From contig OZ116709.1 in NCBI GenBank assembly GCA_964199315.1, positions 18,476,001 to 18,540,000 of the forward strand: a stretch of DNA of 64,000 nt, in the 5' to 3' direction. Below, piece after piece: positions 39,376-63,978 of the stretch (position 1 is its first letter; each line of letters begins with the position of its first letter). The stretch is from Orbicella franksi (taxonomy: Eukaryota). The notes below the pieces were generated by a model. That model was not told the origin of the DNA and made no database searches. It saw only the letters and a program-made list of their open reading frames with translations. A program made the position numbers and the translations under genes.

Positions 39376-42300
39376 TCACCAGTTCACTTGGTCGGACTGG
39401 AGGGGTTGGATAATAATCAGTTCATTAGGTAATTGAACTGTCCTACCAATGTCCAAACGGAACCTCGCCTGTGAGCTAACCAATATCGCCAGAAGGACTG
39501 GGGCTGATTGAGCGCGTGACGTAACGGTAATCTGCGACTGAGATGAGCCAGTCACGAAGTCGATGCTGTTTCCATGGTAATCAATACCAACAAATTTTAC
39601 TTGTGTGCCTCCCGGGAGAAGCATGGGTTTAAATTGGAGGTGTTTGTAATCGAGAAGCCGCAATCCGCCATAACCGAACAACACAGACTGCAAAAATCCC
39701 CCAGCACCCGTGATGAAGTTCACAGCGCCCCCACCGTCTGCTCCCTCGGTCCAAACCATGAACGGTTCCTTAGCGTTCACATAGCTTTCCCTGAATGAAG
39801 TCTCTGCACGGGCGTATTCCCCGACATCGAGCCAGTTGACCGCGAACATTGATTTAGTCATGGCGGGCCCTCTTGGGTTCGTCCGGGGTTCATAAAAACT
39901 CAGATCACTTCGACGAACGTCGAGGCTCATGTTGACCATGAGTGGAAATCCGAGGAGAATGACATCGGCTTGCTTGACTTCGACTCCATTATACCCCTCG
40001 TATTCCGGATGGTAGTTGTTAGTAGAATCGAACGGAATAAACATGTTCTGTGCAATGGTCTTCCAGTTTTTGGAAGCATTCGGCAAGGCTTGGTAAGCGA
40101 ATTCGAGATTCATTTTCGCGATCGTGTTCGTGTAGGCCGAGTTGTTGACGACTTCGGCGTCTTCGTCAGGCGGCATGACGTCATAAATGACGTAAGCTTT
40201 CTTCGAGTCGTTGTACCATGCGCGGTTGGCCCAGAATTCCGCAGTGGCTCGAATGACCGGGAAGGCCTGGCGCTCAAGCCACTGTTGATCGCCAGATGCC
40301 ATCCAGAGCTGTTTGATTGCAAATGCTATGTCCCCGATAATGTGCTGCTCGTAATCGGAGTAAATCTCTCCTGGGCACACTTCTGAGCCAGTCAAGGCGC
40401 TTTCCCAAGGAAACATGGCGCCTGTGGAAAGACAATGAGAAGAAATAGATTTATACAACCCAAATACGACAGAGTTCAAATGAAGTCATTCTCTTCGCAC
40501 CCACCTTTAAACCCATATTTCTTGGCTTTGTCTTCAGCTGCCTGAAGTCTTGCAAACCTGTAAGCGAGGCACGTTCGTGCAAAATCTTGGTGCAGAAGGA
40601 CTAACGGAGGGAACATCCATGTCTCTTGGTCCCAAAACACGTGGCCATCATAACCATCAGTAGCCAGGCCTCCTGGACTCAGACCGAAGATCCATGAGGG
40701 ACGTAATGAGCTGAAAGGAAATGACGTCATTGAACATAAACTGAATAGATGCCAGTTCAAACTGGAGTTAAGGGAACTAAATTGTTCGGAAGACGCAAAC
40801 GTGAGAACCAGCTCATAGTTCTTACCAAGAGATTCAGATCACGTTCTCTTATTGTCACCGAAAAGCCCCACCGGGAAAGTGTCACTGCAGGGGTAGATCC
40901 AGAATTTTACCTGAGTGACTTACATCAACTTAACTAGGGGGATTGGGGGCACGCTCCCCCAAGAAAATTTGAAATTTATTGCTCCAGTCAGAATGCAACT
41001 TTTCTGTTTTCAGAGAAACAAACGCAGGTTTGGAAACATTTGATTGATTTCTTCAACTTTGATTGATTTCTTTAATCATTTTAACTATTCTGAATCCAAC
41101 CCCGCACTAAGTTATGGTATTATTGTGTGGTTAGTGTCAACGAACGTAAGGTTTGACGCAGGCTTCAAACGAACTTCAAGCGACTGGGCAAAACCTACGA
41201 TGATAATATTCACAGCAACTTCCCGGAGTTACTGAAAGAACAGGAAAAATGACTCGTACGTTTGACTTAATCAATGTATGACGGCGAAAAGCGCAGGTGA
41301 ACTCCTTTGGGTAGAAACAAAAACTTCCCCGAAATTTGTCTGACAAACTCTATGAAAGGAAAAGAAGAATTGGAACTACCATTTTTTTTTTTTTACTAAC
41401 ATGTCGTATACGCGTGATCACGTTCGCTTTCGCGTCACGTATCACTCGCGTTTAACGTTTATCGCCTTCCTTTTTCTTGGAATGTTTGTTCAAATTTACG
41501 TTATCTGAGTTTTCACGTCCCTCTTCCGTTCTCGGACAGGAAACAACTACTGTGTGAAACGAAATGGACTTCTATAGCTATGTAGTATTTGCCTGGTATG
41601 CATCATTTGCTGTTGGTATGCTTATTGTTTGAAGTGATCGTGTTATATGAAACCTCACATAACTTGCTGTTCCACAAAATTATATTTTAAAGAGGGATTA
41701 GTCTAATCCTGTCCTTAGCATTCTATTGTTTTACTAATTCAATATAACCCTTGAATGTATAGAAGGGTTATTGACCAAGTGTGAGGTCAAGAGTTCTGAA
41801 TGTCGGCCAAGTTCTTTTTATGGGTCTCGAGGTCCATAAACACGCAAAAATAAAAAACGAGGCCAATATCCAGCCTTGTTGCCGGACAAGTTTGGTCAAC
41901 AAATGATAGGGTATCAAGAACCATTTGCTTGCAGGGAAACAGCGATTAATCCCAGAACACCTTCTTGGCCATTCGGTTAGCAAATTTCGCTCATCTTGCC
42001 CGCTTGCATAGCAGTCAATTACATTTTAATAAAATTAAGGGATTTCCGCGATGTTGTACCATATTTATTATTGCAACGTATGTTGGCAAGGCTGAAGAGT
42101 TGGCTTTTGTCATAGCGGGGACTTCTATTTAAAAGCGTTCCGCGTTATATCAGAGTTGTACCGTATTAATCAAAGAGGTTTAAAGCAAAAGGATGCTCAT
42201 ATCTGTAGGTTTTCCTAACCGAGTGGCCCTGGGTAAGACCTACAATGGTGCAGGGATTTGTTTTATTTCAAGGGTTAAGGTATGCAAGCGAGTAATATCA

Positions 42301-43373
42301 TTTAAAGTTGAAAAAAAACACACACACCTTATCTAAATCTCATTAAGAACTTCCTTTAGCAATGTTTACAGAACGATTTGGCAGGCATTCCTCATTTATT
42401 ACATTAGTTGAGCACTATTGTACTTATAAAATAATTGTCTAAAGGGATGTTAATAAGGCATCAACCTGTTAAACTAGTGAATAAGAGGTTTTTATCAATA
42501 CCTGAGTGTGTAATAGAGACTACCGGAAATTGTCTGTGCCAGTGTAAGATTGCCTTCCACTTCGATCCGCCCATCATTCCATATTTCTCTCCAGGCTTGG
42601 ACGTGACTTTCTAAGAGCTCTTCCGGTTTTTCCATTGCTGCTGTGTAAGCTTCGCGTGCGCTTGTCACGAAATCTTTAGCATCTAAACTGGTGGCTATAG
42701 CCGTAATAAAGAAAAACGTTTGGGTCTGCGCAGAGGGCTTGATCAGCAGACGAGGTGGTATTTCCCCCCAGACCACCGCTACTCCCTCCCTTCGACTGTC
42801 TGGTTCCTCCGTTATCCTAATATACCCTGACATGGCATTGATCTTAGGGTCATTCTGAGATTTACGCGGAACATCATCTCTTTGGAACTCTATATCAGCG
42901 CTTGGCGGTCCAACTACATTAGTCAGGAACAAGCTTACTGTGTCACGCATGTTGTTTTGTAAGGAAATCTCCGTGACAAGTACATGCTGGCGAACTCGAT
43001 GAGCGTAGATCTTTTGCTCCAAGGTGAAGTTTTCGACGACTAAGCGGTGATAAAACACGCCTTGTTCGACGTTCAGACTGAACAGCTCCACGGTCGCGTT
43101 GGAGGTCAGATTACTTCGCACGATAATCGCCGCAGTCGATGGAATTCGTGCCCTATGACTCGGTGTTTTTGTTCCTCGTCCGTTGAAGATCCCAGACACG
43201 TAAACAGTATCGCTGAAAACTGTAGTAGCTAAGTAACCGTTTCCAACACTCGGGTTTAATCGAGGATCCCAGGAAAGACTAGAAGATTCGAAGTTTGTCG
43301 CATTTGGTGCAGCAATGCCAGTATGACAAAAGCAAACCAGGCAAAGAGTGATGGCCAAAAACGCAGACGTCAT
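39376..43373 (-). CDS. PGGHG: Protein-glucosylgalactosylhydroxylysine glucosidase (GH65, acid-trehalase-like ATHL1), ~707 aa. Exons 43373-42502, 40710-40505, 40421-39376
   Basis: Exons sum to 2124 nt and are phase-consistent GT-AG. Motifs: GSLYYTLSS, GLSPGGL, YDGHVFWDQETWMFP, GAMFPWESA..G.EVCP, VMPPDE, VKQADVILLGFP, GPAMTKSMFAV, PFMVWTE..GGAVNFITGAGGFLQ. The catalytic acidic residues (FWD, PDE, WTE) are intact. Confidence 0.95.
41768..41902. repeat. Palindromic dispersed repeat in PGGHG intron 1
   Basis: Inverted arms ttattgaccaag / tttggtcaacaa and ggccaagttctttt / aaaaaacgaggcc. Confidence 0.5.
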
Positions 43374-46039
43374 TTAGCCTGTGAGTGGATTCTTTGCGAT
43401 TCCTTCAGCTGTAATGCAGGTCTGTACTTGATTTACTTCAGTGATAACGCCAAACCAAAGTCAGCATATGTAGCTCACTGAGTAAGAGAGCAAGACAGGG
43501 AGCAATATTTAGCTATTGGGCCCAACAGTTCCCTCAGACTTGTTTAGTTCAATGATATCCCAGTCCTCAGAAACAGCAAGTTCTCTGCGCTATATGGCGC
43601 ATGACTATCAGTAATATGATCTTGGCAGTGCAATGATGCAGTATCTATTTTTTTTTGGAAGACCACCATTGTCCTTCATGGTTCGCCAACGTGAACTAAA
43701 TTGATAAAAATGTAATCCACAACACAACTTATTTTGCGTTAAAAATTGGAAACACTCTCGCGCTCTTTCTTTTCTCTTCCCTCTATTTCCCATCTTTTGC
43801 AATCTTTGCGGATACTCTTGGGCAGCCATAAATTAAAGGCCATTTTTTTTAGGCTGAAGGGATGTTAGGTTTGTAACTGACGCTCTCTCTTTCCTTTCAA
43901 TTCTGGATGAATTTTTTCGTTTGTTAAAAATCTTAATCTCCGTGCGTCAAGTCAGAAAAATGAAAAATGAGCTGATGACGTGACTAAAAGGTTTAATGCA
44001 ATTAGACATAGATAATCTGGCAGTGAGAAGGATCAATGTCGAACTAATCTTTTCCGTTTTGAATTTAGAGTTTTTAGCAGCTGAGCGAAGCCGTACTACT
44101 GGCTCTCTGTAGGATACACGGATCTCGTACCAGAAATAATATTCGCGCGCTTGTGCCGGTCGTCCCTCTCTTCCAATCCCCAGTCAGATTAGTTGGAGAA
44201 GGGAGAAAAGGAGGGGGAGGGGGCGGGGAAGGGGGCAAGCAAAGGGTAACACTTCAGGTTAATTAATGAAATAGAAAAGAGCCGTATAAATGAATTTCTA
44301 CCAAACAGTGTAAAGCAATGAAGGCCCTGTTCAGGGAAATTGTGAAAAGGCGTATCATCTCCTGACGTTATCATATCAGCCTGCGGAACAGTCGGTTTAG
44401 CGCGAGCGGGTCAGAGCGCGCGTGGAGCAAGACTCCAAGAGTACTAAGTACGATCGCGCGTTGACGACCAGATTCAAGACTAAATGTTTTTAGAACCCTA
44501 CAACCACATTTGAAATGAAACAAAATTAGAACGTTCTCAGTGACCATTTTAAAAATTCTGCTCGTAGAGCGAGATGGGCTCTTCCCTAAAATTAGCAAAT
44601 AAAGAAGATTGCAAATATTTTCAGCCCCCAAATGAGCCGTATCTATATATATTTTTGTGATAGATATTTTTCAAGCGTCAGATTATTTTTCACAAAATAA
44701 CCGGCTCAAACTAACTTATAACTTACATAATTTTATGTCAATTCATTGAACCCAACTGAAGACGGTTATTTCAAAAACAGAAGGCTGGAAACAGCATAGC
44801 CAGCGTTTGCAGACAAATTTACACCTATTGTTTTAATTTCGCCAGCGGAAATCCGTCTTCGTTCGTAGCTTAGATATAGTAAAGCCACATCAGAATTAGA
44901 TTAATTACGACCGTATTGTGACTAAAATAACTTACGCTCGATATTATCAACAGGATACACGGAATTTTCTGAGAGTAAATGAGTAATACTAGGTCTGTAA
45001 CCTTTTTTCTTGCATCCATCCATGCCAGTACGCGCTCCATGTTCGTCAAAATGACATTTACAAGCCAAAAATAGTAAAAGATAAAGTTTGATTTCTTTCG
45101 ATAGCATGAAACAATATGATCGATGAGCAAGCTGCTATAATACATATAGGGCTCGGCCCTCGTACAAATTCACGTGACCAGTGACGCAAAAGCGCCTGTT
45201 ATCGCAGGCCAGATTTTTCGCAAAATCTCAGCTTCATATTTCAACTTTGACCTGGCCATATTATCGATGAAGTTCAATTTCAGTGCAGACAAAAAATTTC
45301 ATTAACGCTCGATATTCGATGTTTAAACTGAAACGATTAAAGTGTATATTTGGCAACGCAAATTTCAAGCACAAGTTCTAAATTCCGCCATGATTATTGA
45401 TGCCTTTAAAACACGCTTTTTCATTAAACCACTGAATTCTTTTTTGTAGCCGAGGTGTTTCTGAACACGTTTCAGAGCCGGTTGGAATTAATCATAAAAA
45501 TTAGAATGCTGTTGCGAAGAGTTAAACAAAATTTGCTTTCCACATATCAGAATGAATTCCTTGAATTCTATCAACTGTGTAAACCGGATGCCTATTTTGA
45601 ATGTATTGCCCAATTTATTTACATCTCAGCTATACCAAATCCCGACCTTTATTTCAGAATGTCGTCTGACAGGGCTGTCCTTAATATATCAAAGAAAAGC
45701 TGACTTTTGCTCAAGCGACTTGTCGTTCTGACTTTCAAAGATCTTTGATCTTCATTGTTTGCTCTTTAAACAGTCTTTGCTGTAACTGCGGTTTTAATAA
45801 AACCAAGATCAACAGCGATTGGCCGGTTGTGGCGGGATTTCGGAAAATGTCAACAATGGAGAGCGCTATTGGTGTTTCTACTTTCCATTAATATACTCGC
45901 AGACCAGTGACGCAGACATGCAGATTTTGTCGTATAGATTATTTATTTTCCTCGTAGAAAAACAAACAAGCTTATAAATGTTCCTTCGACATGGATTCGA
46001 CCGACAGGTCAGTGCAATGTTGAATTCGAAAACAACGAT

Positions 46040-49000
46040 ATGGCTTTCTTTTGTCCCTCCCAGCTGACGTTAAAAAAGAAAGGTAATAGTGGTTTTGTTT
46101 TAACCATAAATTTGCCACTTGCTTCGCATAACGCAAATGATTAGCATTTGTCTTTCTTTGAAAGTTGCAGTTCACATTCTGCTGTCATTGTGGCGTAATT
46201 ATTCGCTACGTTTCTAACAACTGTCAACGCTTACTTTTTGTCTTGGTTAGTGCTACAAAGCAAGAAGCCATATCCGCCAGACGTTTACCGACCTTCGACT
46301 ACTTTGGAACAGAACGGGACTGTCCCTTTGGAAGTAACGAAATCTGCTTTGAAAAACGGCTCGACTCCAAACCACAAGCATGAGAAGCGAAATGTCAGAA
46401 TTAGCGAGTCTGGATTTAAACATGAAACTCTCATTGAGCGGAAAATTCGAGCGGCAACTTTAGCAAAACCCGCAAATATCCGAGTAAAGGTTATGAAAAG
46501 TTACCACCCAGTCGATAAAGAAGAACTGAAGGTACGAAAAGGACACTACGTGAAAATACTCTACCAACAAAATGACTGGGCTTACGTTGTGGATTCGTCA
46601 GGAAGCGAGGGTTTTATCCCGTTGTGTTATTGCTCTACGACAAATGTTTCCACTGACTCGAAGTCTAGCACTTCGGGTTACGAAGATAGCTTCGAGGACA
46701 GCGAGGACGGGGTCGGAGAAAGGACAGCAGTGGTGGTGTACAGTGAATCGTTGACGAGTAATGATAGTCACAATTCGAAATCGATGACTTATTTTCCAAA
46801 GCGAGCTTACGGACCGCAATTAACTGTTTTGTACGACTACACAGCTCATGATGAAAATGATTTGAGCGTCTGTCGTGGTGAACTTGTGATGCTGCTGAAC
46901 GATCAGGACCAAGATTGGCTATGGGTATCCACGGAAGATGGCGAAGAAGGCTTTGTACCGAGATCTTTTGTGGTTTCTCACGTGTGCGAAGGTAAATAAT
47001 TTGCTCCTCAGTTAAGTCTCGCGTATGTGTGTCGTTTTAGTTTTTTATTGAAGTGTTGGAGAAACAGACAAAGGAGTAGCCTCTAAAACTAAGAGCATTT
47101 CAAAACGATACATTTGAAGACCTCCGCAAAATATTTGTTGTACGCACTCCCAAGGAAAAACCATGCTAGACTACAGGGAGAGTTGATAGCCTAGACGCAT
47201 TGCTGTCTGAGAATGAGTCAGTATTGCTAACGAAAAAGGATATAAAACACAGGAACTACAAGCATGTTAACTGCCCGACTCTCATCGTCTCCAAAAGTAT
47301 AGTTGTATATTTTAGAGCACGCGGGTACACAACCTGTCTTTTCAGAAGGACTCTTGATATGTCGCGATCTTGATTAAAATTATGTCTGGTTTAGATGAAT
47401 TCCTCGTTATTTGGCCATTGACCTGCAACCAGTATAACTGGATACCTTTTCTTAGTTTAAGAGCTAATTTCAACGAGCTTGTTAGTTCTGTAAGCAAAGT
47501 ACATGTGTATTTTTGTCTTGAGCAAAAATGTCGAGCTTAATATGTGGCATTCGGCTCTTATCAGAATAAACATTTTCATTCGGATATTCGATTATGAAAG
47601 CACTTAGCTGATAAACCAAAAATTGGTATTTTGGCAATTAAAATACTGTCTACACCTTGTTGAAAATACCCCTGGATTGTTATGGCTTTGATAACCTCAA
47701 CCTTTTAATGTTTCCACATGATTCAACTCACGTTATAACACGATCAAAGCCTTGTTATAATGTTCCATTTATTTACTTAAGAAACCACATGCTACGTTAT
47801 CGCAAGTCGGCTGAGTTGGTTTTTTTACTGAGGTAGCAAAGTGACCGAGATACAAGCAATGTTTCAGACAATGCTACCGCAGACAGACTTACAAAGAGTT
47901 GTGAGACGGTTTATGGTAGAAAAAGGAAAATAAGCTTTAGGATTAGTCATAAAAGAAGATAGAGGGTCAAATATGGTCAAGATTTAAAGGAATTGCAAAC
48001 ATTTGAACTTAGTTTTTGTCAGAATTATAGTTTGGGGCTTTTTTATATTTTAACGCAATCTTATGTGTAGTGTACAGCGGTACAGGACGACTCCTTGGGT
48101 CAATTCCGTGCAGGTACGCCTCGATCATTTTCAGGAAACAATGACAAAACGATGGCGAGCATGACTTAGTTTCATAATTATAGTAACTGAATTATCTTTG
48201 ACAATACTAGATGTTACATTTGCTGATACTACGTCAAAATATGCAAAATATATCACTTTCGCCGATTTGATTAAATCTTATGTTTTCATCGATTTTTGTC
48301 AAAGGTCTACCTAATTTTACCGGCCGAGTCCTTACTTAAAATGGAGTAAATGCTTATTAAGCTTGAATGATTGATCAAGTCCACGATCAAGGAATGACTA
48401 AAAAGCAGTCAGGGTGAAATTAAATTATTCCAGTGTACTATTGCTAAGTACAAAGCTGTCTCCACGCGCAGCAAAACCCTTTGGACTCGCATTCAGTTTA
48501 AAAAAGACCCGGAAAGCTCAAAGAGCTTTTACAACAAAGTTTCTAAGTTGAGGAGAAAAAAAGGAAAGGCAACATAGCTAAACGCGAGTCAGGCAGAAGT
48601 TTCCGTGCACTGTGTCTTGAAGAAATAAAATTTGCAGGAGAAGGGCGGGGGAGCTGACGACCAGTGCAGCTTGTAAGCAGATCTTAAGATAATTATTAGG
48701 CATTGTAGGTGAAGTAAGATTTGGAATGTACGTGAATTCAAAGACAAAATTTATTGACAGTATCACTCTTTCTTAGTCAAAACGTTTTCCTATTTGAACA
48801 CACAGCTTGCATGCAGCGGTTATCCTCACCGAACGCAGCCTCGCTCAGCTCTCCAGACTTGAATTCCTCTGACGTCACGCCGACAAGTTCATGCTCTACT
48901 GGCAAGAAATCCAAATCGTCATACACGGACGTGACGTCATCAGCGTCCAGTGAAAAGACTTACACGCTCAAAGGCACACGGTTAATTGTGCTTCATAACT

Positions 49001-49170
49001 TTCAAGGGAAAGCGTTTGATGATTTGCCTGTGAGACCTGGAGAGTACGTGTACGCAAACCTCAAAGACCAAATTGTTCCTGGTTTTATCTGGGCGTATTC
49101 GCCGAACAGCAAGAAATCTGGCTTCATTCCAGAGGATCGTGTTAAAGAGCCAGTTGTAACAGATATATGA
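46040..49170 (+). CDS. Dlish: Three-SH3 adaptor, Dlish/Vamana ortholog (Dachs ligand with SH3s), ~382 aa. Exons 46040-46082, 46251-46991, 48806-49170
   Basis: Exons total 1149 nt with both introns in phase 1. N-terminus MAFFCPSQLTLKKK resembles fly MAFLCPVRMRRDKKK. SH3-1 ..ILYQQNDWAYVV..EGFIPLCYC, SH3-2 ..DENDLSVCRGELVMLLN..DWLW...DGEEGFVPRSF and SH3-3 GTRLIVLHNF...DDL.VRPGEYVYANLKDQIVPGFIWAYSPNSKKSGFIP all line up with Drosophila Dlish as recalled. Confidence 0.87.
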
Positions 49171-49884
49171 AGGGTGGTTAGAGGCAGTCACTCCTTACGT
49201 GTCACCGCGCCACTGAAGACAATGCTTGATGTATCGAGACGCGTTTGTCATATGACGCTGGAGAGAGTGCATTTAACAGGAGCTATAAGAGCGGACACCA
49301 GCAACCTGTTAAACAGCGAAACCTTACCAGAAGAACAAGATAATAGTATTAGTCGCCCTGTAGGTTAATACGGACCATATTTATGCTCTCTTGTCGTAAA
49401 CAAGCACTTTTCTCAGTCGGAAACCCAGTTGGAGGCTGGCGATTTTCGACCTAGGTTGCTAAGGAACACGGAACACGACAACATTAAACTAGAATTTCCA
49501 GAATGCACGTGCTACTTAAATCAGGATCCACTTGTTTGTCATGACCATTGCCAAGCAATGTACATCATGACCCGATTGTTGCAATTGGGTAGAAATTTAC
49601 CGGAAACCCCGCTTTATTGTTAGCCGGAACACCAAAACTGGATTTAGATGAGTCCAAGGTGAACGAATGCCCTTTCACTTATACGGAATTCCGTGAACAG
49701 ACTTAGTTACTTAAAGTCATGCCACACCAAGGGAGGTGATTTATCCAAATATGATTTATCAACGATCTATCATCGTCGTTGAATTGCCATTGATTTGCCT
49801 CTGACCCTGACATAACAAACTTCTGTGTAAGAAAACAAGCGATCATTCCAAGCTATAAACTTATCATATTATCATGCTAAGGAA

Positions 49885-54086: not shown

Positions 54087-57000
54087 TTATACGTATTTTT
54101 CTAGAGTCACATATTCTTTTGGCGCCATACCAGGCCTTCTTCTCTCCTTTTTGCAAATGGGACACTGATTCGGGGGACGCTCCGTCGAGGAGTTCCGATG
54201 AAGAGGGCACGTATCCACCAGGGACAAAATGGGACTGCAATAGGAGCTCCTGGAGCAAACGCTGCGGTCGGTCTCCGAGCTACGGCTGGAGTCTGTAGAG
54301 GGTGGAGAGGGCCCCTTCGGGGCTGGGGATGCGTCGCGTCTTGTTTGCGGTGCGTCTGGATAACGTTTCACTGCTGGGGAACTATTGGACCGTTGCCGGT
54401 CCCGTGAGGTACCTCGTTGACCTTGTCGTCCCCTCCCCTCCCCTGTCCACGGGGGCATTGGTGCTAACGATCCTTTAGAAAGTTTTATATCCCGTGGAAC
54501 TGGATCGTAGGATCTGCGACGAGGCTCTTGAGGCTCTCTACCACTCATCGCATTCAATTCGTTTGTTTCTTCTGCGATGACTCTTTCCTGGATGGGCTGA
54601 AATTGGTGTACTAACGGTTTATTCAACGAGCTCTTCCTTGGGAATGGTTCGCTATTGAGTTCAGAATTTGAAGTATCAGCTATGAATTTCTCTTCCGTAA
54701 TAGACTTCCTTCCCCGCAATTGCTGACAAGCTCGCCTCAGAAGATCGTTCTCCTTTTTCAAACTGACAATCTCGTCGCGCAGTTTTTCCATGTCTTCTAT
54801 GAGCTGAAGATTTTCATCTTCCAGTCGCCTGTATTCCACTCCCATTTGCTCCATTTTACCGGACGAATCTTTCAGATTTTCCGTCTCTTTTAGGACACTG
54901 TCTAAACGACTCGACAGAAGTTTGGTCTTTGTCTTCATGGCTTCGTCTTTTTCCAATAACTGTTCAGCAAGCTGTTCTTTAAGAGACGCTTGGTTTTGTT
55001 TCTCCTTCTCGAGTTGTTTAATCTTGGTTGCCATTTCGTGTAGTTCTTCAACGAGACCTTTCTTCTCTTGGTCCTTGGTTTCGAGCTCCTTATACAGTTC
55101 TCCCACATCTGTCTCTAGACTCTTGTTCATCTCTTCAAGTCTATTGTTTTCTGTGAACAAATTCTTCAGTTTGTCATCCAAGTCTTTTTCACTGCTTTTG
55201 TCAAGAAGAACAATTTCTAGATTTGCCTTTTGCTGTTTGTTGATCGCTTCAATACGTTCTTTATCGTACTCCAGTGAACGGACTTGAGACGCAAAGTTTT
55301 CTTTGTCTTTCTCCAATCCACGGACATCATTCTCAAGTTTCCGTTGAAGGGCATCGAGACCTTCGACTCTCGCCTTTAAGGAGATTGCCTCGTGTTCCTT
55401 CGACTCAAGCTTTGACATTAGTTCTTGGTTTTTCTTATCCATTTTCAGTTTAAACGAATGCGCGTCGTCTACAAGCTTATCTTTCTCACTATCCAACTCT
55501 TTACAGTTTTCTTCTAAGTTTTGGACTTTGTCCTTCAAAGCATTGCGCTCCTTTTCCAAGACTCTCAACTTGTACTTAGTTCCTTGGAGTTCAGCGTCTA
55601 TCGCTCGGTTTTTGCTCTCGGCGGCTTCTTTGGCACTCGATAACTCACTGATGCGATAGTTAGCGTTTTCCAACTCTTTAGAGATCTTTGCAAAATTGTC
55701 TTTGTTCATTTTCTCTAGTTCTTTACTCAGTTCTTTTACGTTTTTCCACAATTTTTCATTTTCTGTGGACAAGCGGTCTTTCTCCTTTTTCAGTTCCTTT
55801 ACCTTGTCAGACTCTTTCACCGCTTTCCCGTCTTTTTCTTTCGTATCCAGCAGCGATCGCTTCAATTCCGCATTTGCCTGTCTCAGAGAATTCTTCTCTG
55901 CTCGTTCATCGTACGACAGAGTCCGCAGCTTCTCAACTTCGTATCGAACTTCGGAAACCTCGTTCTCGACAGCGGTTCTCTCCATTAGCGCCAGCTCCAA
56001 TTTCCCTTGGAGTTCGCTGACCAGTGATTGTAGGGACTCCTTCTTGATCGCGGATTCATGCAAGCACTGCTTCAAGGCGGTAATCTCAGCGCGTGATTTG
56101 TTCTTCTCGCGTAAGTAATCAAGTAGGTTCCCTTCACCCTTAGATCGCTCCTCGTCCAGGCATTCCTCTAAACCTCTGATATTTCTGCGCAGCTCTTCGA
56201 GACAATCTTTCAAGCGTTCGGCTTCTTCTAAGTCCCTTGCCGTTAGATCACTCTGCGTCTCCAGCTCTTGAGTGCTCGTTTCAGCTTTATAGCTTCTAAC
56301 ACTCGCCGAGCGGCCTTTCTGATGTTTTCCATTGAAGTCAACGAGATGCTTAAATCTTTCAACTTCAACCAGCGACTCGTTCAGGATTTGCTTCAAAAGA
56401 ATCTGCGCAACTTCAGAGCGTTTCAGTCTCCTCGCGATCCTGTCTCGCTCTCTGCAAACTTCGTCTAACTGCTTAAGAAGATCTTTGTTCTCCTCCATGG
56501 ACTTTTCTATAAAACTCCGAGCCCGCTCGCTGGACCTCTCCGCGCTGTCTTTTTCAGACTCCATTCGACGGCTCTCTTGGATGTCGTTCTTAGCTCGGCT
56601 TAGCAGGTCTGCTGTTTTGGACACAGCCTCAAGCATATCTGACTCTGCTTTTCGTAGAGTGCCTTTCAGCTCTACCACTGTAATAAACGATGATCTGTTC
56701 TTCTCCATGGCTAGAATTGAAGAGAGCTCGCGGCGCATTTTCGTATACTCCTTCTCCATGTCTTCAATAGTGTATTGAAATCGCTTTCGTTCTTGCTCGT
56801 GTAGTCGTTCCTTCTGTTTCAAAGCTCGCAGCGCATCGGACAGCTCGAGCTGTAAATCAAAGACTTGATCACGTGCTTTTCTTAACTCGCCTCTCAACTC
56901 CTGTTCATGGGATTCCAGCATGGTTATTTCTTTTCTGGCATTTTCAAGCGCGGCGGCTTGTTTTTCGAGTTGGCCTGTTTCTATTTTCGGCGGGGTCTGG

Positions 57001-60000
57001 CTCAGCTGAGAGACTTTAGAAGACATGATGGTTACTATTTCCCCGCCACTCTCCAATGCCTCAGTAGCGGATGTCTTTCGCACCTTTTCTTCGGTAACCA
57101 TCACATTTTGGTATCCTTGTCGATCTTTTACTTCTTCTAACTCTTTCGTTAGTTTATTTTCTTTCTCCTTGGCGATGTTTAGCGCTTCTTGCAGTCGGTT
57201 GTTCGCCCGCCTGAGGCTCTCCAATCGCTCCTCGTCCTCGCATCTCTCTTTCAACGTCTTGCGGAACTCTTCTCGAGCCGTCGCCAAGCTTGCTTCTTTT
57301 TCCTTGAATTCCTGCTCCTGTTCAAACTTCGCTCGTTTGTAATCGACTATTGTTTCTTCAAGCAATCCGATTTTCTTATCTTTCTCAGCTAGTTCGTTTT
57401 GCAATTCGATAATTTGATCGTTCTCTGCCGTTTCTGTCTTGATGTCGCTGTCGATGTTCTCTTTTAGTTCATTCCCGGCTCGTTTCTGCTCGGCAATTTC
57501 TTCTTCAAGTGTTGAAATCTTTAAATCCTTCTCGCTTAGTTCCTCTTGTAATTTCTCGAGCGTATCTTGCATTTTTCGTTCTCGCTCCTGTCTGGATCGT
57601 TTGTAACTGCCGATTATTTTTTCCAGGGCTGAAATCGCTTTGTTCTTCTCGTCCAGTTCATTCTGTAATTGATCAAACTTTTCCTGAAGGTCTTTCTGTG
57701 ATGGGTCCGCCATTGCCTCGTTTTCTTCTTGTTCTTTCTCAGATTTCAATCTTTTGTACTCAGCAATTTCTTCTTCGAGAGATGCTATCGTTTTAGCTTT
57801 CTCGTTCAATTCCTGCTGTACTTTATCGATTTCGTCATAAAGCTCCTTCTCTGTTGCTGCAGATTGCATCTCGGACTCCTCTTTCGCCGATGTCACCTCT
57901 TCCACTGCTAAACGTAATGTGGAGTTTTCGTTCTTTCTCTCGGCCATTTCACTCATTATCTCCTGATTTTCAAGGCTCAACTGGTCCAGTTTGTATTCAA
58001 GTTCCTTCATTCTTTCCTTGCTTTTCGCTAGCTTCTCTTCGACGAGTTCTTCGACTTCCATGTCGAGTTCTTTTGATAGGCGTTTTACTTCTTGAGCACT
58101 CTTCTCCAGGGCATCCTCCAACTTTTTCCCTTCTTCCAAGGCTGCACTGTACTCTCTTTCCTTGGTTTTTATTTCCTCGCGAAGAACATTTTTATCTTTT
58201 AGGAGAACCTCTAGCTTTCTCGATAGCTCTACTTTACCATCAACCAGAGATCCAATCTCTTCTTTGTAATGTTTCGTATTCTCATCCAGTTTGTCCTCCA
58301 AACTTTCTTTTTCCTCAATCAGGTCATCTACGTTTTGCTGTAGCTTCTTCGCCTTAGACCTCAACTCTTCAATAATTTCGTTCAGTTCGTCTTTTTCATC
58401 GTTAAGTTCCTCCAGTTCCTCGTTTAACTCTGAATTAATCTGACGTTGCTTCACTAATTGGTCCTCGAGAGAACCTCCTTCATCTGAGGCCGACTCTAAG
58501 CTGAATTCCATGTCTGCTGCCGATGAAAGTGTTCCTTCCTCAGCACACAGGATTATTTCTTCACTTTCCTTCACATTTCCTGCATCTTTCTGATCATGAG
58601 CGAAAGTTTGCGACGACAATTTTAACAAGTCTTTCTCTCCTTGCAATTTCGCCAATTCCTCTTCAATATTCGCTCTTTCCTCTTTTTCACGTGCAAACTC
58701 GTGTTTCAAATTCTCCGTGTCTTGAGCCAATGTCTGCGAAGAAATCTTCAGAGCGTCGTGATCCTTTGTTAGTTTGGACAGTTCCTCTTCGACATTCTTT
58801 CTTTGTACTCTTTCAAGTTCAAGCTCCTGCTCCAGTTCGTTCTTCTCTTCAGCAGCGTCATCCAATTTTTCCTTGAGAATTTCACATTCACTTGTTAGCC
58901 TCTCCAACTCGCATTCGATGCGTTCTGTTTCTGTCTTCATTTCAATCAACAAACTTTGTTCTTTACTCTGAGCTTCGGCAAACGCTAAATTCAGGGCGGC
59001 CATTTCTTCCTCGATGGCTTCTAACTTCGCCTTCAGCTTTTTGTTTTGTTCCTTTGTTTTTGCTGCTGTTGTTTCTGCTCTTCCAAATTTTTTCTCTGCG
59101 CTATCCAGGGCCTTCTTCAACTCTTCGTTTTCCGTTTTCAACTGATCAAATTTGTCTTTGCTTTCTTGCATAAGACCTTTTGAATCATTCAATTCCTGTT
59201 GAATTTTCTCCAGGCTTGAAGTCTTCTTTGCCAGTTCCTCTTTGAGCGATGTTAACTCAGATTTCAACTTAGCGCACTCGTTTTCCATGGACTGTTTGCT
59301 TTTGTTTAAATCAGCCAGCCGTTTCTCCTTGTTCTTATCTTGTTCTTCCAGGTCCTCTAAGTTTCTCTGTAGGGACTCCTTGTCATTGCCAGTAGTCGAA
59401 ATTTGCTTTTTAAGATCTTCGTTTTCTTCTTGATGTTTGGTTATGTCTGTCTTCAATTCTTGTAACTTCACGTCCAGCGCTTTCTTAGCGTCCGTTTGTT
59501 CATTTAATTTCTTTTGCAGGTTGTTTCTTTCCTCGATCACTTCTTTGCGCGACTTCTCAGCTTGACTACACTGCTTTTCGAGTTCAGTAATCTTGTTTTT
59601 TAACTCGTCGACAACTCTGAGTAACTCTGAAAGGGAGACGTTCGACTTCTTCAAGTCTTGATTGAGGGAATGAATTTGCTTGTCTTTCTGGTCCAGCTCT
59701 TTCTTCCACTTCAGTACGTTTTCTTTGGCTAGCATTTCCACTGAAGACAGATTAGCAGTCTTAGCTTCAAGATTTTCTTCTAGCTCAATTTTTTCTTCTT
59801 GTAGCTTCACATTTTCTTCGTCTACTTCCTTCAAGCGTTTTTCAAGATCTTGACATTTATTCTCGGCCATTGTAAACGACTTCTTCTCCTCTTCAAGCCT
59901 AGAAGCACAAGCTGTCAGATCCTGTTGATTATTTCGGTGTTGTTTCTTTAGCTTCTCCAACTCTTGCCTCAAACTTTCAACTTTATTCCTCTCGCTTTCC

Positions 60001-63000
60001 AACTCCGTGAGCAGTTTTTCCGAGCCATTTTTCGCCATTTCCAATGCTACTGCCACTTCTGCTTTTGTTAGGCTCAAAGACTCGGCTTCCCTCTCTTTAT
60101 GCTCCAACATTTTTGCCTTCTCGCTCGCTTCGGCAGTAACAGTAGCGATTTGCTTTTCTTTACTCGCTAACGCAGCTCCTAACTTCTCCTTCTGCAAGCT
60201 AAGCTTTTCGATCAGAGTACGAACATCACTAATTTCGCGCGATAGTCGCGTTTCATCTCGAGAACGCGCGGGTGTTGATTCAGATGGTGCGTGTTCCATG
60301 TGTTCTTTGTCTAGCGCCTCTTGCAACTGTAGCGTCAACTCAGCTCGCTCTTGAATGAGCTCCTTGTTGTTGTCTTGGATTTCGCGATTTGTATTTTCAG
60401 CCTTCTCGAGTCTTTCCGTCGATGTTTTCAGCTCATTCCTCAACTCCTGCAAATCTTTCTCTGCGCGTGCCAACTTCAATGCTTCTTCTTCGAGTTTTGT
60501 TGCCAAAGACGCCTTTTCTTTCGAGAGAGCTTCGATATGTTTACAAACATATTCCACAATATTTGTCTCTTCACGTGTCATCTCTTTAGATTGTTTCGAT
60601 GGATTCCTTTCGAATGATCGATCAACAAAAGCGAGCAAATCTGTAGCTTGGGTTTTCAAATCCTTAAGCTCATCTTTCATCACAATACTCTCTTTTTCTA
60701 CGTCTTCCAACTTGCGTTCAACAGATTCCTTATCGCCTTGTAACTTTTCTAGGCGATCTTGGAATTGTAAATTCTCCTGTGACTTTTTGTCCAACTCTTC
60801 TGTAAGAAGCTTCTCGCTTTCTTTGAAGTTTGCAACTTGAGTCTTTAAATCGTCTTTTTCTTCTTCTGTTAGCTCCAAGTCGTCCTCGGTGGCATCAAGC
60901 TTGTCTTGTGCGGCCTTAAGTGAGCTTTTTAAGTTTTTAATTTCGTTGTTTAGCTCCTTAGTAACGCTTTCCAACTCTCGCTCTTTCTCTATGAGAATTT
61001 CATCTTCTTCACTCTTCTCTGTTCTGGCTCTTGCTAATGTTTCCTCAAGTGTCCTGTAGTCGTCTAGAAGTTGTTCCTGTCTCCTATCGAGGGCTTCACT
61101 CTCACTCTTCATCTCATCAACCAGTGCATGAATATCTTCGTTTTCTTTCACCATATTCTCATATTTTTCCTCTAATTCAGTCAAGTCTTGCGATTTCTGT
61201 CGAAGTTGTTCTTCAAGCGATTTCACCTGCTCTGAAAGCTGGGTCAGCTGTTTGCCCTCCTTATCACTATCCGTTTCAACGTTTTCAAGCTTCTTGCTTT
61301 GTGCGTCCAGATTCTGCTGGAGAGTCTTGTAATCCTCAGTGAGCTTCTCTGATGATTTACTAAGCGCCTCTCTCTCTTTCTTTAAGTCGGATATGTCCTT
61401 AGAAAGTGTGTCATTCTTTTGTTTGAAGGCTTTCAAAGACTTCTCCAGTGCCTCGGCTCTTTCCCAAGACTCACTGGCTTGGCTTTCGAGTGTTTTCTTG
61501 CGCATGTTGGCCAGTTGAAGGGCTTCTGTCGCATCTTTGTTTGCTTTCTCTTGTTTCTTCAAGTCTTCTCGAAGCTGTGCGTTTTCTTTGTTTTTCTCTT
61601 CTAATGCCGCTGAGATGTCTTCTGTGGGTTTGTCCTCATCTCCCTTTTGCTTTGAGACTTCCTCAAGACGTTGTTTTAGTTTTTCTTCTTCCTCCTTAGC
61701 TCTTTCGAGATCTCTCAGCAACTCTTCGTTTTCCGTTACAATAGATTCTTGTTCTTTCTCCATGATTTCTTTCTCAGCTGACATGGAATCAAACCAACTT
61801 TTCAGTTGTTCGATCTCTTCAGTGCTTCGTTTCAGCTGTACCTCAAGCGCCTTTTTCTCCACAGACAGTTCAGTGTAGCGTATATCAAGCTGCTGTTGGT
61901 CATCAGGTGACACACTTTGAAGCAAAGAACTTGCCCCACTTGAGACTAGCAACTCCGTATCATCGATCGGTTCTTCTAGAGCTAAGGACACAACTGTTTC
62001 ATAGGCAGGCGGGCTGCTGCCGTACTCCGAAGCCGTTGTAACTTGTATTTCGTCTCCGGATTCCGACGATTCCTGAAGACCATCGCTTGAGTCGAGAGGA
62101 CTTCCCTCCATAACGCTCGCCTCAAGCCGTTCTTCTTGCGAAGAGAGCTTACTTGTTTTCAACATTTCTAGCTGTTTCTTTAGTCCGTCGTTCTCCAAAT
62201 GCAGGCGATTGATAACCTCTTTTTCTTCGTCTCTGGCACTCACGTCGCTCGCTTCTTCCACGCTCTGGTCAGCTTCAATTTGAGCGCCAGTAACTTTTTC
62301 TTTCAACTTAGCCTCGGACGTCTTCAGCGTTTGAAGCTCGTTCGTGATGTCAAGCAGCGCTTCTTTAAGGGCGTCTCGCTCCTCAGCCATTCTATAAAGC
62401 GACTTCTTCAAGCTTTGAACCTCTGCAGAAGCCTCCGTCATGGACTTGCTGTTTTCGTGCTGCTTACACAACGCATCTTCCAGTTGGCACTGCAGACTCT
62501 CCTTGCTTTGATAAACGTTTTCTAAAGCATCAGCTAAGTTGGTCTTCTGCTGTCTGATCTCATCCATTTGTTCTGACATCGCCTCTTTCTCCTCGGTGAG
62601 TTTCGTAATAAAACTCTTTACTTGCCGTCGCTTTTCGTCAAGTTCTCGCACGTATTTTTGAAGGGACATTTTTTCCGTTTGAGACGTTTCAAATTTCGTC
62701 TTCAGCTTTTCTTGTTCCACTTTTACCCTCCTGAGTTCTTTCTTGAGAAGCGTGACTTCTTTGTGGACTTTTTCAGTCAGTGAGATTATGCTGTTGCCTT
62801 GTTCTTCCAAGGATATCGATTCTTGAAGTTCAGCATCGTGTTCTTCAGAAGTACTATCTTTATCTTTGTCTGTCAGAGCCTCGTAAAGCTCTGACAGTTT
62901 CGCGTGTATCGATGTCATCTGTTGTTTGGCTTTGTCAGTGCTTTCAACGCCAGCTGTAACCGACTCGAATTCGGTCTTTAAACGCTGATATTTCCCCTTC

Positions 63001-63978
63001 AAATCGTTCAGTTCGTTTTCCGTCATCTCAATCTTCTTTTCTAAGGTTGTCTTTTCTTCGGTGACTTCGTCCAAAGACTCGGCAAATTCTTGTTTTTCTT
63101 CGTGTGCTTCGCGAAGGCATTCTTGAAGCGTGTCCGAAACTTCTTGGTTCTTTTTCAACTGATTCTTCGATGATACGCATTCGTTCCTTAATTGCTGTAC
63201 TAGCTCTCGCAGTTCCTTTTCGCTTTTGCTACTCTCGTCCAGTTGTCCTTGAATTTTCTCTTTCTCCTTTTCAAGTTGAAGTACACGCTCTTCTAAGCTT
63301 TGTACATGTTCATTAAGTCGAAGCTTGTTTGTTCGTGACTCGTCTTCAGTCTCTTCTGTGGTAGAACCATTTTCGTGTACGTAATCGTCACTGTCTTGAG
63401 GACAAACGTGATCGAAATTCTCGCTTTTCAAAACGTTCCCATTTACATCTCTATCCCGGTCACTTGTGGTAAAATCTTGTTGTTTGTTGAGTAGAAGGTT
63501 TGTTGACGATTCTTGCAGCCCGTTAGCGCCATTGTATTCTTTAATTACACTATTGAGTTTATCGATTTGCACCTCCAGGGACTCGTTCCTTTCGAGTTGA
63601 TGATACAACGAGTCCAGCAAACAAACCTTTTCCTCTTCTAAGTTAGAGTTGTCGGACTTGAGCCTTTTAATGACATTTTCCAACTCAGTTCCGCGCTTGG
63701 TAAGGCGAAGGATGTCTTGTTTAAGAAACTCGCATCGCTCGACCGAAGTCTTTCGACTTGGTAGCATGCTACCGGTGCTGTTGTACTCCGGTGGCGTCTT
63801 CTCGCCCCGCTTCGTCCGCAGAATTACCACCTCTCGCTTTAGCTTGATACAGCTATCTTCGATGTCTCTTTTGTCCACTTGAAGTTGTCGTATTTGGGCT
63901 CTTTGTGAGTCTATTAATTCTTTGCATGTCTTGATTTCGCTCAAAAGGCTCGAGTTATGAAATTTTTGCGAGGTGTCC
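54087..63978 (-). CDS. Terminal giant exon of an uncharacterised very long coiled-coil protein (>3285 aa; golgin/centrosomal-type scaffold); the 5' end lies outside the window
   Basis: Uninterrupted ORF 63944-54087, rich in E/K/L heptads with no catalytic motif. A probable acceptor (gtgtctccccAG) precedes 63978, but the frame also stays open to the window edge. Ends in a low-complexity R/S/P tail with a Cys/His motif. Confidence 0.88.

What the first reader, a model, noticed from the sequence alone, without database searches (positions are those of the whole stretch)
46040..49170. Dlish/Vamana ortholog: a Fat-Dachsous-Dachs-Hippo adaptor in a probable cnidarian
All three SH3 domains, including the unusual third one (YANLKDQIVPGFIWAYSPNSKKSGFIP versus fly YADLTNQTVDGWLWAYAPKTRKYGFIP as recalled), the pre-SH3 ETL motif and the N-terminus match Drosophila Dlish/Vamana. 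In flies this protein links the Fat intracellular domain to the atypical myosin Dachs and Expanded to control Hippo growth signalling and planar polarity, and it has no clear vertebrate counterpart. A full-length copy here implies that the Fat-Dlish-Dachs module may predate Bilateria and could regulate polyp or colony growth. Pipelines would probably label it only as an SH3 protein.
Basis: partly seen in the sequence, partly recalled or inferred. Interest (0 to 1): 0.8.

Follow-up and report, generated by a model that had tools for sequence, protein, structure and literature searches.

The report
Coral Dlish-family SH3 adaptor gene
This is a real, expressed coral gene of the Dlish (Vamana) triple-SH3 adaptor family. 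Cnidarian members of the family are already published and already named in public annotation, and a second copy elsewhere in this genome resembles insect Dlish more closely.

Summary
A three-exon gene (46040-46082, 46251-46991, 48806-49170, + strand) encodes a 382-aa protein. It starts with MAFFCPS plus a basic run and carries three SH3 domains. Poly-A RNA reads confirm both splice joints.

- **Family:** it belongs to the Dlish family. The best non-cnidarian match of a profile of its near-identical coral orthologues is a mite protein that NCBI names "dachs ligand with SH3s".
- **Not a one-to-one orthologue:** this genome has a second full-length paralogue on contig C3. Mite, beetle and hoverfly Dlish match C3 better (about 195-218 bits against 147-161).
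- **What C3 keeps and this gene lost:** the GRITGS motif, the Cys71 equivalent and the RPPAxTxL tail.
- **What this gene keeps better:** SH3-2, the Dachs-binding domain in flies.
- **Age of the split:** Nematostella has both paralogues, so the duplication is at least as old as Hexacorallia.

The novelty claim fails. Zhang et al. 2016 and a 2026 preprint already report Dlish homologues from Placozoa or Cnidaria to cephalochordates. NCBI already names the orthologues "Dlish" or "Dlish-like".

I could not test whether Dachs is present in this genome. The scan had already noted the 43-nt first exon on this same window (s1-196328).

The parts
43326..43419 (+). Alternative 5' exon, GT donor at 43420, spliced to exon 2. 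It would replace the MAFFCP N-terminus. An in-frame ATG lies at 43323, just beyond the end of the observed contig.
   Evidence: RNA contigs of runs X5 (94 nt) and X6 (10 nt) carry these letters directly before 46251. There is one exact match in the window. Frame checked. The exon overlaps, head to head, the start of the minus-strand GH65-like gene (Met at 43373).
46040..46082 (+). Coding exon 1 (43 nt, phase 1): MAFFCPSQLTLKKK, with Cys5 followed by a basic run. This is the conserved N-terminal motif of the Dlish family, a candidate palmitoylation and membrane-binding signal.
   Evidence: The joint 46082|46251 is seen in 4 poly-A RNA reads. The motif is invariant in coral orthologues and shared with arthropod, mollusc and hemichordate Dlish.
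46251..46991 (+). Coding exon 2: degenerate pre-SH3 motif (VRISESG..ETL, 46394-46450), SH3-1 (46478-46633), an acidic Ser-rich linker (46649-46711) and SH3-2 (46817-46975).
   Evidence: Pfam SH3_1 E 1.2e-18, two stretches. Coordinates. The exon product is 94% identical to the transcript-derived protein P0001. RNA depth covers the whole exon.
48806..49170 (+). Coding exon 3: second Cys of a CxxC pair specific to this paralogue type, a Ser/Thr-rich linker, SH3-3 (48979-49143), the tail KEPVVTDI and the stop codon. The 3' UTR runs at least to 49700.
   Evidence: The joint 46991|48806 is seen in 5 reads and 2 contigs. Structure model and Foldseek SH3 matches. Coordinates.

Best explanation
The locus is an expressed member of the Dlish/Vamana family of small triple-SH3 adaptors. 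It is the cnidarian-specific 'type B' paralogue, whose orthologues include Nematostella XP_001631714 and a Hydractinia protein. The same genome carries a second full-length paralogue ('type A', contig C3) with the same three-exon structure, plus a third, partial relative on C8.

Most likely mechanism, by analogy with the fly protein and therefore inferred, not shown:
- Cys5 and the basic run tether the protein to the cortical membrane through S-palmitoylation by a DHHC enzyme of the Approximated type.
- SH3-2 binds a proline-rich motif in a partner. In flies that partner is the C-terminus of the myosin Dachs.
- The other SH3 domains recruit further partners, so the protein scaffolds a cortical complex downstream of Fat/Dachsous cadherins.

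An alternative first exon would give an isoform without the lipidation motif. Whether the two paralogues arose within Cnidaria, which would make both co-orthologues of fly Dlish, or earlier, is unresolved.
For: - Gene model and expression.
- Three SH3 domains.
- Family assignment: a profile of 7 near-identical coral orthologues finds 32 proteins at E<=1e-30. The full-length hits from other phyla that I looked up carry Dlish names (mite 'dachs ligand with SH3s'; Ptychodera, scallop, nemertean, starfish and sponge 'Dlish-like').
- Shared family features: the MAF(F/L)CP-plus-basic N-terminus, GFIPxxYC after SH3-1, and the WxWAYSP..GFIP core of SH3-3.
- Paralogy: the C3 gene has three exons with the same intron phases (1, 1).
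- Both paralogues are present in Nematostella.
- The type B clade is supported at 99/95 and 99/91.
- SH3-2 of the window protein is 55-58% identical to mite and copepod Dlish (47% to an ostracod's), against 40-45% for type A. Its canonical ligand-binding residues are intact (read from the alignment).
- Fly domain functions come from PMC5047748 and PMC13104975: SH3-2 binds Dachs, the N-terminus binds App, and palmitoylation is needed for cortical localisation.
Against: - No binding, lipidation or localisation data exist for any cnidarian protein of this family.
- I could not show that this genome has Dachs. An older survey (PMC3620549) reported none in the coral Acropora digitifera or in Hydra.
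- Type B has lost several features that type A and bilaterian Dlish share: the GRITGS motif, the Cys71 equivalent and the RPPAxTxL tail. Its partners may therefore differ.
- A hydrozoan, Hydractinia, carries type B, although medusozoans are reported to lack a true Fat (bioRxiv 10.1101/602029). This argues against strict dependence on Fat.
Confidence: 0.8

Rival explanations
1. One reading: the window gene is the one-to-one orthologue of fly Dlish and carries its full Fat-Dachs-Expanded adaptor role in the coral.
For: NCBI names the Nematostella orthologue 'Dlish' without '-like'. SH3-2, the Dachs-binding domain, is better conserved here than in the other paralogue. The best non-cnidarian hit of the orthologue profile is an arthropod Dlish.
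Against: Three arthropod Dlish queries all prefer the C3 paralogue: summed bits 195, 218 and 209 against 161, 149 and 147. Type A groups with hemichordate and arthropod Dlish at 93/94. Type A keeps the GRITGS motif, Cys71 and the RPPAxTxL tail, and type B does not.
Confidence: 0.12
2. Type B is an ancient out-paralogue that split from true Dlish before cnidarians and bilaterians diverged, was lost in most bilaterians, and has its own function unrelated to Dachs.
For: In both trees type B sits outside a group that holds sponge, mollusc, arthropod and hemichordate proteins together with cnidarian type A. In the first tree two uncharacterised hemichordate proteins were its sister at 89/96. Type B has its own conserved features: a CxxC after SH3-2 and an acidic Ser-rich linker.
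Against: The trees are unrooted, and type B lies on a long stem. The AU test does not reject a single cnidarian A+B clade (delta lnL 9.0, p 0.16). The hemichordate pair moved to the C8 relative once that was added, at a weak 83/38. The mosaic conservation, with A better in SH3-1 and B better in SH3-2, fits subfunctionalised co-orthologues at least as well.
Confidence: 0.25
3. It is a generic multi-SH3 adaptor, and the resemblance to Dlish is only the shared SH3 fold.
For: The profile search also picks up many unrelated SH3 proteins at weaker scores (1746 hits at E<=0.001).
Against: The similarity extends outside the SH3 cores. It covers the N-terminal MAFxCP-plus-basic motif, the ETL segment, YC after SH3-1, the odd SH3-3 core, the domain order and the overall length. 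In this genome insect Dlish scores 147-218 bits on the two paralogues, about 64-91 bits on the related C8 locus, and under 45 bits on any other SH3 locus.
Confidence: 0.02

Closest known systems
Drosophila Dlish / Vamana (CG10933), represented here by arthropod orthologues P0035 (mite), P0260 (Tribolium) and P0311 (hoverfly)
   Same: Size (350-420 aa). N-terminal MAF(L/F)CP plus a basic run. The order NT, SH3-1, linker, SH3-2, linker, SH3-3. YC after SH3-1. The unusual SH3-3 core WxWAYxP....GFIP. SH3-2 is 55-58% identical to mite and copepod Dlish.
   Different: Overall identity is only about 35%. The GRITGSxS motif is degenerate (VRISESG). The Cys71 equivalent is absent. The tail is KEPVVTDI instead of ARPPAxTxL. 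There are extra type-B features: a CxxC after SH3-2 and an acidic Ser-rich linker. It is not the reciprocal best hit, and no functional data exist.
Nematostella vectensis XP_001631714 'SH3 domain-containing protein Dlish' (P0031), and NCBI 'Dlish-like' of Oculina patagonica (P0002) and Stylophora pistillata (P0013)
   Same: Direct orthologues (type B). The exon-2 product is 80-89% identical to the two coral proteins, and Nematostella scores E 1e-145 against the orthologue profile. They share all type-B features, including the HxCExC motif and the KEPVVTDI tail.
   Different: Nematostella has a longer SH3-2 to SH3-3 linker (491 aa in total).
Type A cnidarian paralogue: this genome's C3:5310830-5315300 gene; Nematostella XP_048577723 'Dlish-like' (P0056); Acropora cervicornis 'Dlish' (P0345)
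   Same: Same three-exon structure and intron phases, same N-terminal motif and same three SH3 domains.
   Different: Only 33-45% identical per domain to the window protein. It keeps GRITGS, Cys71 and RPPATTPL like bilaterian Dlish. Its SH3-1 is 63-73% identical to arthropod and hemichordate Dlish, against 43-47% for the window protein.
Other small SH3-only or SH3-rich adaptors (Nck, Grb2, CD2AP/CIN85)
   Same: Several SH3 domains used as a scaffold.
   Different: Those proteins lack the lipidated MAFxCP N-terminus and the Dlish-type SH3-3, and they carry SH2 or coiled-coil modules. This comparison rests on general knowledge and was not tested here.

Membership tests
Dlish/Vamana | N-terminal MAF(L/F)CP followed by a basic run. 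The first six residues are 'highly conserved in homologs' (PMC5047748), and the N-terminus binds App (PMC13104975). | tested here: met
   MAFFCPSQLTLKKK is encoded by exon 1. The exon is spliced in RNA. It aligns with arthropod, mollusc and hemichordate N-termini.
Dlish/Vamana | Three SH3 domains in a 350-450 aa protein with no other domain. | tested here: met
   Pfam for SH3-1 and SH3-2. Structure model plus Foldseek for SH3-3. The family HMM covers positions 3-370.
Dlish/Vamana | Pre-SH3-1 motif GRITGSxS(I/V)(E/D)(T/S)L(V/I). | tested here: inconclusive
   The window protein has VRISESGFKHETLI. The R-I-S and ETL positions are kept and the rest is changed. Type A and bilaterian proteins keep the full motif.
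Dlish/Vamana | Conserved cysteines equivalent to fly C5 and C112 (PMC13104975). | tested here: met
   Cys5 is present, and so is the Cys in GFIPLCYC directly after SH3-1 (residues 140 and 142).
Dlish/Vamana | Conserved cysteine equivalent to fly C71, inside SH3-1 (DFxPC). | tested here: not met
   The window protein has SYHPVD at that position. Type A and the arthropods have DFxPC.
Dlish/Vamana | C-terminal tail (A/V)RPPAxTxL. | tested here: not met
   The window protein ends KEPVVTDI. Only the T-x-(L/I) end is shared.
Dlish/Vamana | Reciprocal best hit with insect or arthropod Dlish. | tested here: not met
   Forward, the best non-cnidarian hit of the orthologue profile is a mite Dlish. In reverse, mite, Tribolium and hoverfly Dlish hit the C3 paralogue best and the window locus second.
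Dlish/Vamana | SH3-2 binds the proline-rich motif in the Dachs C-terminus. | not testable with these tools
   No Dachs sequence could be obtained. The ligand-binding residues of SH3-2 are intact by alignment.
Dlish/Vamana | Co-occurrence with a Dachs (class XX) myosin in the same genome. | tested here: inconclusive
   The genome has about 20 myosin-head loci. By recalled signatures, the ones I could read look like other classes. Two loci, C15:15752055-15756495 and C8:29520885-29525022, could not be fetched.
Dlish/Vamana | S-palmitoylation by the DHHC enzyme Approximated, and cortical localisation. | not testable with these tools
   This needs an experiment.

The most novel reading that the evidence does not exclude
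Cnidarians split the ancestral Dlish into two complementary genes. Type B (this gene) best preserves the Dachs-binding SH3-2. It has lost Cys71 and the GRITGS motif, has gained a CxxC and an acidic phospho-linker, and can drop its lipid anchor through an alternative first exon. Type A best preserves SH3-1 and the motif just before it, next to the App-binding N-terminal module. If so, the membrane-tethering and myosin-binding roles that are combined in fly Dlish would be partly separated in corals and sea anemones, and type B might work without a true Fat in hydrozoans.
Probability: 0.2. Interest if true: 0.4.

Novelty: already known. Interest (0 to 1): 0.18.

Why it matters
It matters little as a discovery. 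The Dlish family, its absence from vertebrates and its presence in cnidarians, placozoans and sponges are already in the literature and in NCBI names.

The useful correction is practical. Anyone who wants to test the Fat-Dachs-Dlish branch in Nematostella or corals must deal with two full-length paralogues and a third partial relative. The gene called 'Dlish' in Nematostella is the more divergent one in most family-specific motifs, although it has the best-conserved Dachs-binding domain. Single-gene knock-downs could therefore mislead.

Tried and rejected
1. **Finding Dachs in this genome.**
   - I listed the myosin-head loci and tried to label them by tail domains (MyTH4, TH1). I fetched 20 stretches.
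   - By signatures recalled from human myosins, the readable loci look like classes I, II, III, VI, VII, IX, X, XVIII and XIX. That is a lead, not a test.
   - The protein search accepts only hits of 0.55-1.75 times the query length, so exon-sized queries cannot reach full-length myosins. No tool returned a Dachs sequence, and typing one from memory was not acceptable.
2. **D. melanogaster Dlish itself.** It did not appear in the 120 rows listed. I used Tribolium, hoverfly and mite Dlish instead.
3. **Complex prediction.** Not used, because no partner sequence was available.
4. **Earlier scan notes.** Searches on Dachs, Hippo, myosin and cadherin gave nothing useful for this question.
5. **A missing exon in the 1.8-kb intron.** Rejected: transcripts and reads join 46991 directly to 48806.
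6. **A Dlish origin by duplication from the neighbouring RIM-BP gene.** Not examined beyond noting that both genes carry SH3 domains.

Full report
**What is there.** On the + strand the window carries a three-exon gene: 46040-46082, 46251-46991 and 48806-49170. The introns have canonical GT-AG ends, both are in phase 1, and the product is 382 aa.

- Pfam finds two strong SH3 domains in exon 2 (SH3_1 E 1.2e-18). In exon 3 it finds only a weak, sub-threshold match (SH3_2 E 0.014).
- I folded the exon-3 product with a 23-sequence alignment. Block-mean pLDDT is 85-95 from about residue 60 to the end. The best Foldseek matches in the PDB are all SH3 domains (Sla1 SH3-3, Lyn, Fyn; TM about 0.85). 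The third SH3 domain is therefore real.
- Domain coordinates are SH3-1 46478-46633, SH3-2 46817-46975 and SH3-3 48979-49143.

**Expression.** Exon 2 is held at full word share by RNA runs from several studies. Poly-A raw reads laid on 45700-49700 show both joints exactly as modelled. The 46082|46251 joint is seen in 4 reads. The 46991|48806 joint is seen in 5 reads and in contigs of two further runs. Depth is confined to the exons and to a 3' UTR that reaches at least 49700.

Two RNA contigs instead join exon 2 to another 5' exon that ends at 43419, with a GT donor at 43420. It is in frame, and a possible ATG lies at 43323, just beyond the contig's end. That isoform would lack the MAFFCP motif.

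**Whose genome.** The exon-2 product is 94% identical to a full-length protein from coral transcript contigs, 89% to Oculina patagonica and 86% to Desmophyllum pertusum. Some of the RNA runs are labelled coral metagenome. The host is a scleractinian coral, so 'probable cnidarian' was right.

**Family.** I built a profile from seven coral orthologues (the window protein itself is spliced and could not be submitted) and searched it against 1.8 billion representative proteins.

- After cnidarian sequences, it finds full-length proteins from other phyla.
- The best of them is named by NCBI 'dachs ligand with SH3s' (a mite). Others are named 'Dlish-like': a hemichordate, a scallop, nemerteans, a starfish and the sponge Oscarella.
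- The alignment shows similarity well outside the SH3 cores. It covers the MAF(F/L)CP-plus-basic N-terminus, an ETL segment, GFIPxxYC after SH3-1, and the odd SH3-3 core WxWAYxP....GFIP.

So the gene is a Dlish-family member.

**Not the closest copy.** The mite Dlish, searched back against this genome, hits contig C3 (5311021-5311587 and 5315094-5315297) better than the window locus. Tribolium and hoverfly Dlish do the same. Summed bits are about 218 and 209 for C3, against 149 and 147 for the window.

I assembled the C3 gene. It has three exons with the same phases and encodes 376 aa, starting MAFFCPMRIPRRRRKR. Nematostella has both types:

- XP_001631714, 'Dlish', is the orthologue of the window gene (type B).
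- XP_048577723, 'Dlish-like', is the orthologue of the C3 gene (type A).

A Hydractinia protein falls in the type B clade. In Acropora cervicornis, type A is the one named 'Dlish'.

**Trees.**
- Type B is a well-supported clade (99/95, then 99/91).
- Type A groups with hemichordate 'Dlish-like' and arthropod Dlish at 93/94.
- Sponge and mollusc proteins lie on the same side as type A.
- The trees are unrooted. The AU test does not reject one cnidarian A+B clade (p 0.16). The age of the duplication is therefore open beyond being at least hexacorallian, and probably pan-cnidarian for type B.

**Domain by domain.** The conservation is a mosaic.

| Region | Type A (C3) vs arthropod/hemichordate Dlish | Type B (window) vs the same |
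|---|---|---|
| Pre-SH3 motif | clearly closer | degenerate |
| SH3-1 | 63-73% | 43-47% |
| SH3-2 | 40-45% (arthropods) | 55-58% (mites, copepod; 47% ostracod) |
| SH3-3 | similar | similar |

Type A keeps GRITGS, the Cys71 equivalent and the tail RPPATTPL. The window protein has VRISESG, no Cys at that site and the tail KEPVVTDI.

In flies, the N-terminus (aa 1-63) is the main App-binding part. SH3-2 is necessary and sufficient for Dachs binding. Palmitoylation is needed for cortical localisation (PMC13104975, PMC5047748).

**A third relative.** Contig C8 (19254472-19255215) encodes SH3-1 and SH3-2 in one exon. I found no N-terminal motif and no SH3-3 within 16 kb. It groups weakly with two uncharacterised hemichordate proteins.

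**What is already known.**
- Zhang et al. [quoted passage not shown]
- The 2026 preprint says 'Cnidarians to Cephalochordates'.
- A true Fat and a Dachsous are reported in the anthozoans Nematostella and Acropora, while medusozoans lack a true Fat (bioRxiv 10.1101/602029).
- An older survey found Dachs in Nematostella but not in Acropora digitifera or Hydra (PMC3620549).

The expected 'SH3 protein only' labelling is not what NCBI does.

**What I could not do.** I could not show a Dachs gene in this genome. The Fat intracellular motifs, App and Expanded were not searched. The proposed mechanism is a palmitoyl-anchored scaffold whose SH3-2 binds a Dachs-type myosin. It is inference from the fly protein plus the conservation of the relevant parts.

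**Verdict.** Interest is low. The only small addition is the paralogue structure and its mosaic conservation, which I did not find described in the papers read.

Noticed in passing
G000:C3:5310830-5315300 (L001 7831-8592 and L003 about 1841-2300): A second full-length Dlish-family gene (type A, 376 aa). It has the same three-exon structure and intron phases as the window gene and is closer to arthropod Dlish in most family motifs. NCBI names its Acropora cervicornis orthologue 'Dlish'.
   Followed up: yes
G000:C8:19254472-19255215 (L002 6293-7357): A third, divergent relative. One exon encodes SH3-1 (with a PANIK start like type B) and SH3-2. No MAFxCP exon or SH3-3 was found in the 16 kb read. 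It groups weakly with uncharacterised hemichordate proteins (Ptychodera XP_070572136, Saccoglossus XP_006822987).
   Followed up: partly
window 43326-43419 (+): An alternative first exon of the Dlish-like gene overlaps, head to head, the start of the minus-strand GH65-like gene. The isoform would lack the lipidation motif. It was seen in RNA contigs of two runs from two studies.
   Followed up: partly
window 54087-63944 (-): A single uninterrupted ORF of 3285 aa. It is extremely Glu/Lys-rich coiled coil with only faint Pfam matches, and it explains the strong AT and GC skew of the last 10 kb. An intron-free gene of this size is unusual in a coral.
   Followed up: partly
window about 8690-34420 (+): A RIM-binding-protein-like gene: a coiled-coil N-terminal exon, fn3, Ig_RIMBP2 (E 5e-25) and SH3 exons. 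Two SH3-rich genes thus lie 12 kb apart, which is probably coincidence.
   Followed up: partly
window 39376-43373 (-): A glycoside hydrolase family 65-like gene (Glyco_hydro_65m E 2.5e-34). Its N-terminal exon has a signal-peptide-like start.
   Followed up: partly
C-termini of family members (window 49144-49167): Nearly all full-length family members end in T-x-(L/I): TDI, TPL, TSL, TFL, TAL. This resembles a class I PDZ-binding tail. I did not see it discussed in the papers read.
   Followed up: no
G000:C15:15752055-15756495 and G000:C8:29520885-29525022: Two myosin-head loci that could not be read or classified. They are the remaining places to look for a Dachs (class XX) gene in this genome.
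   Followed up: no
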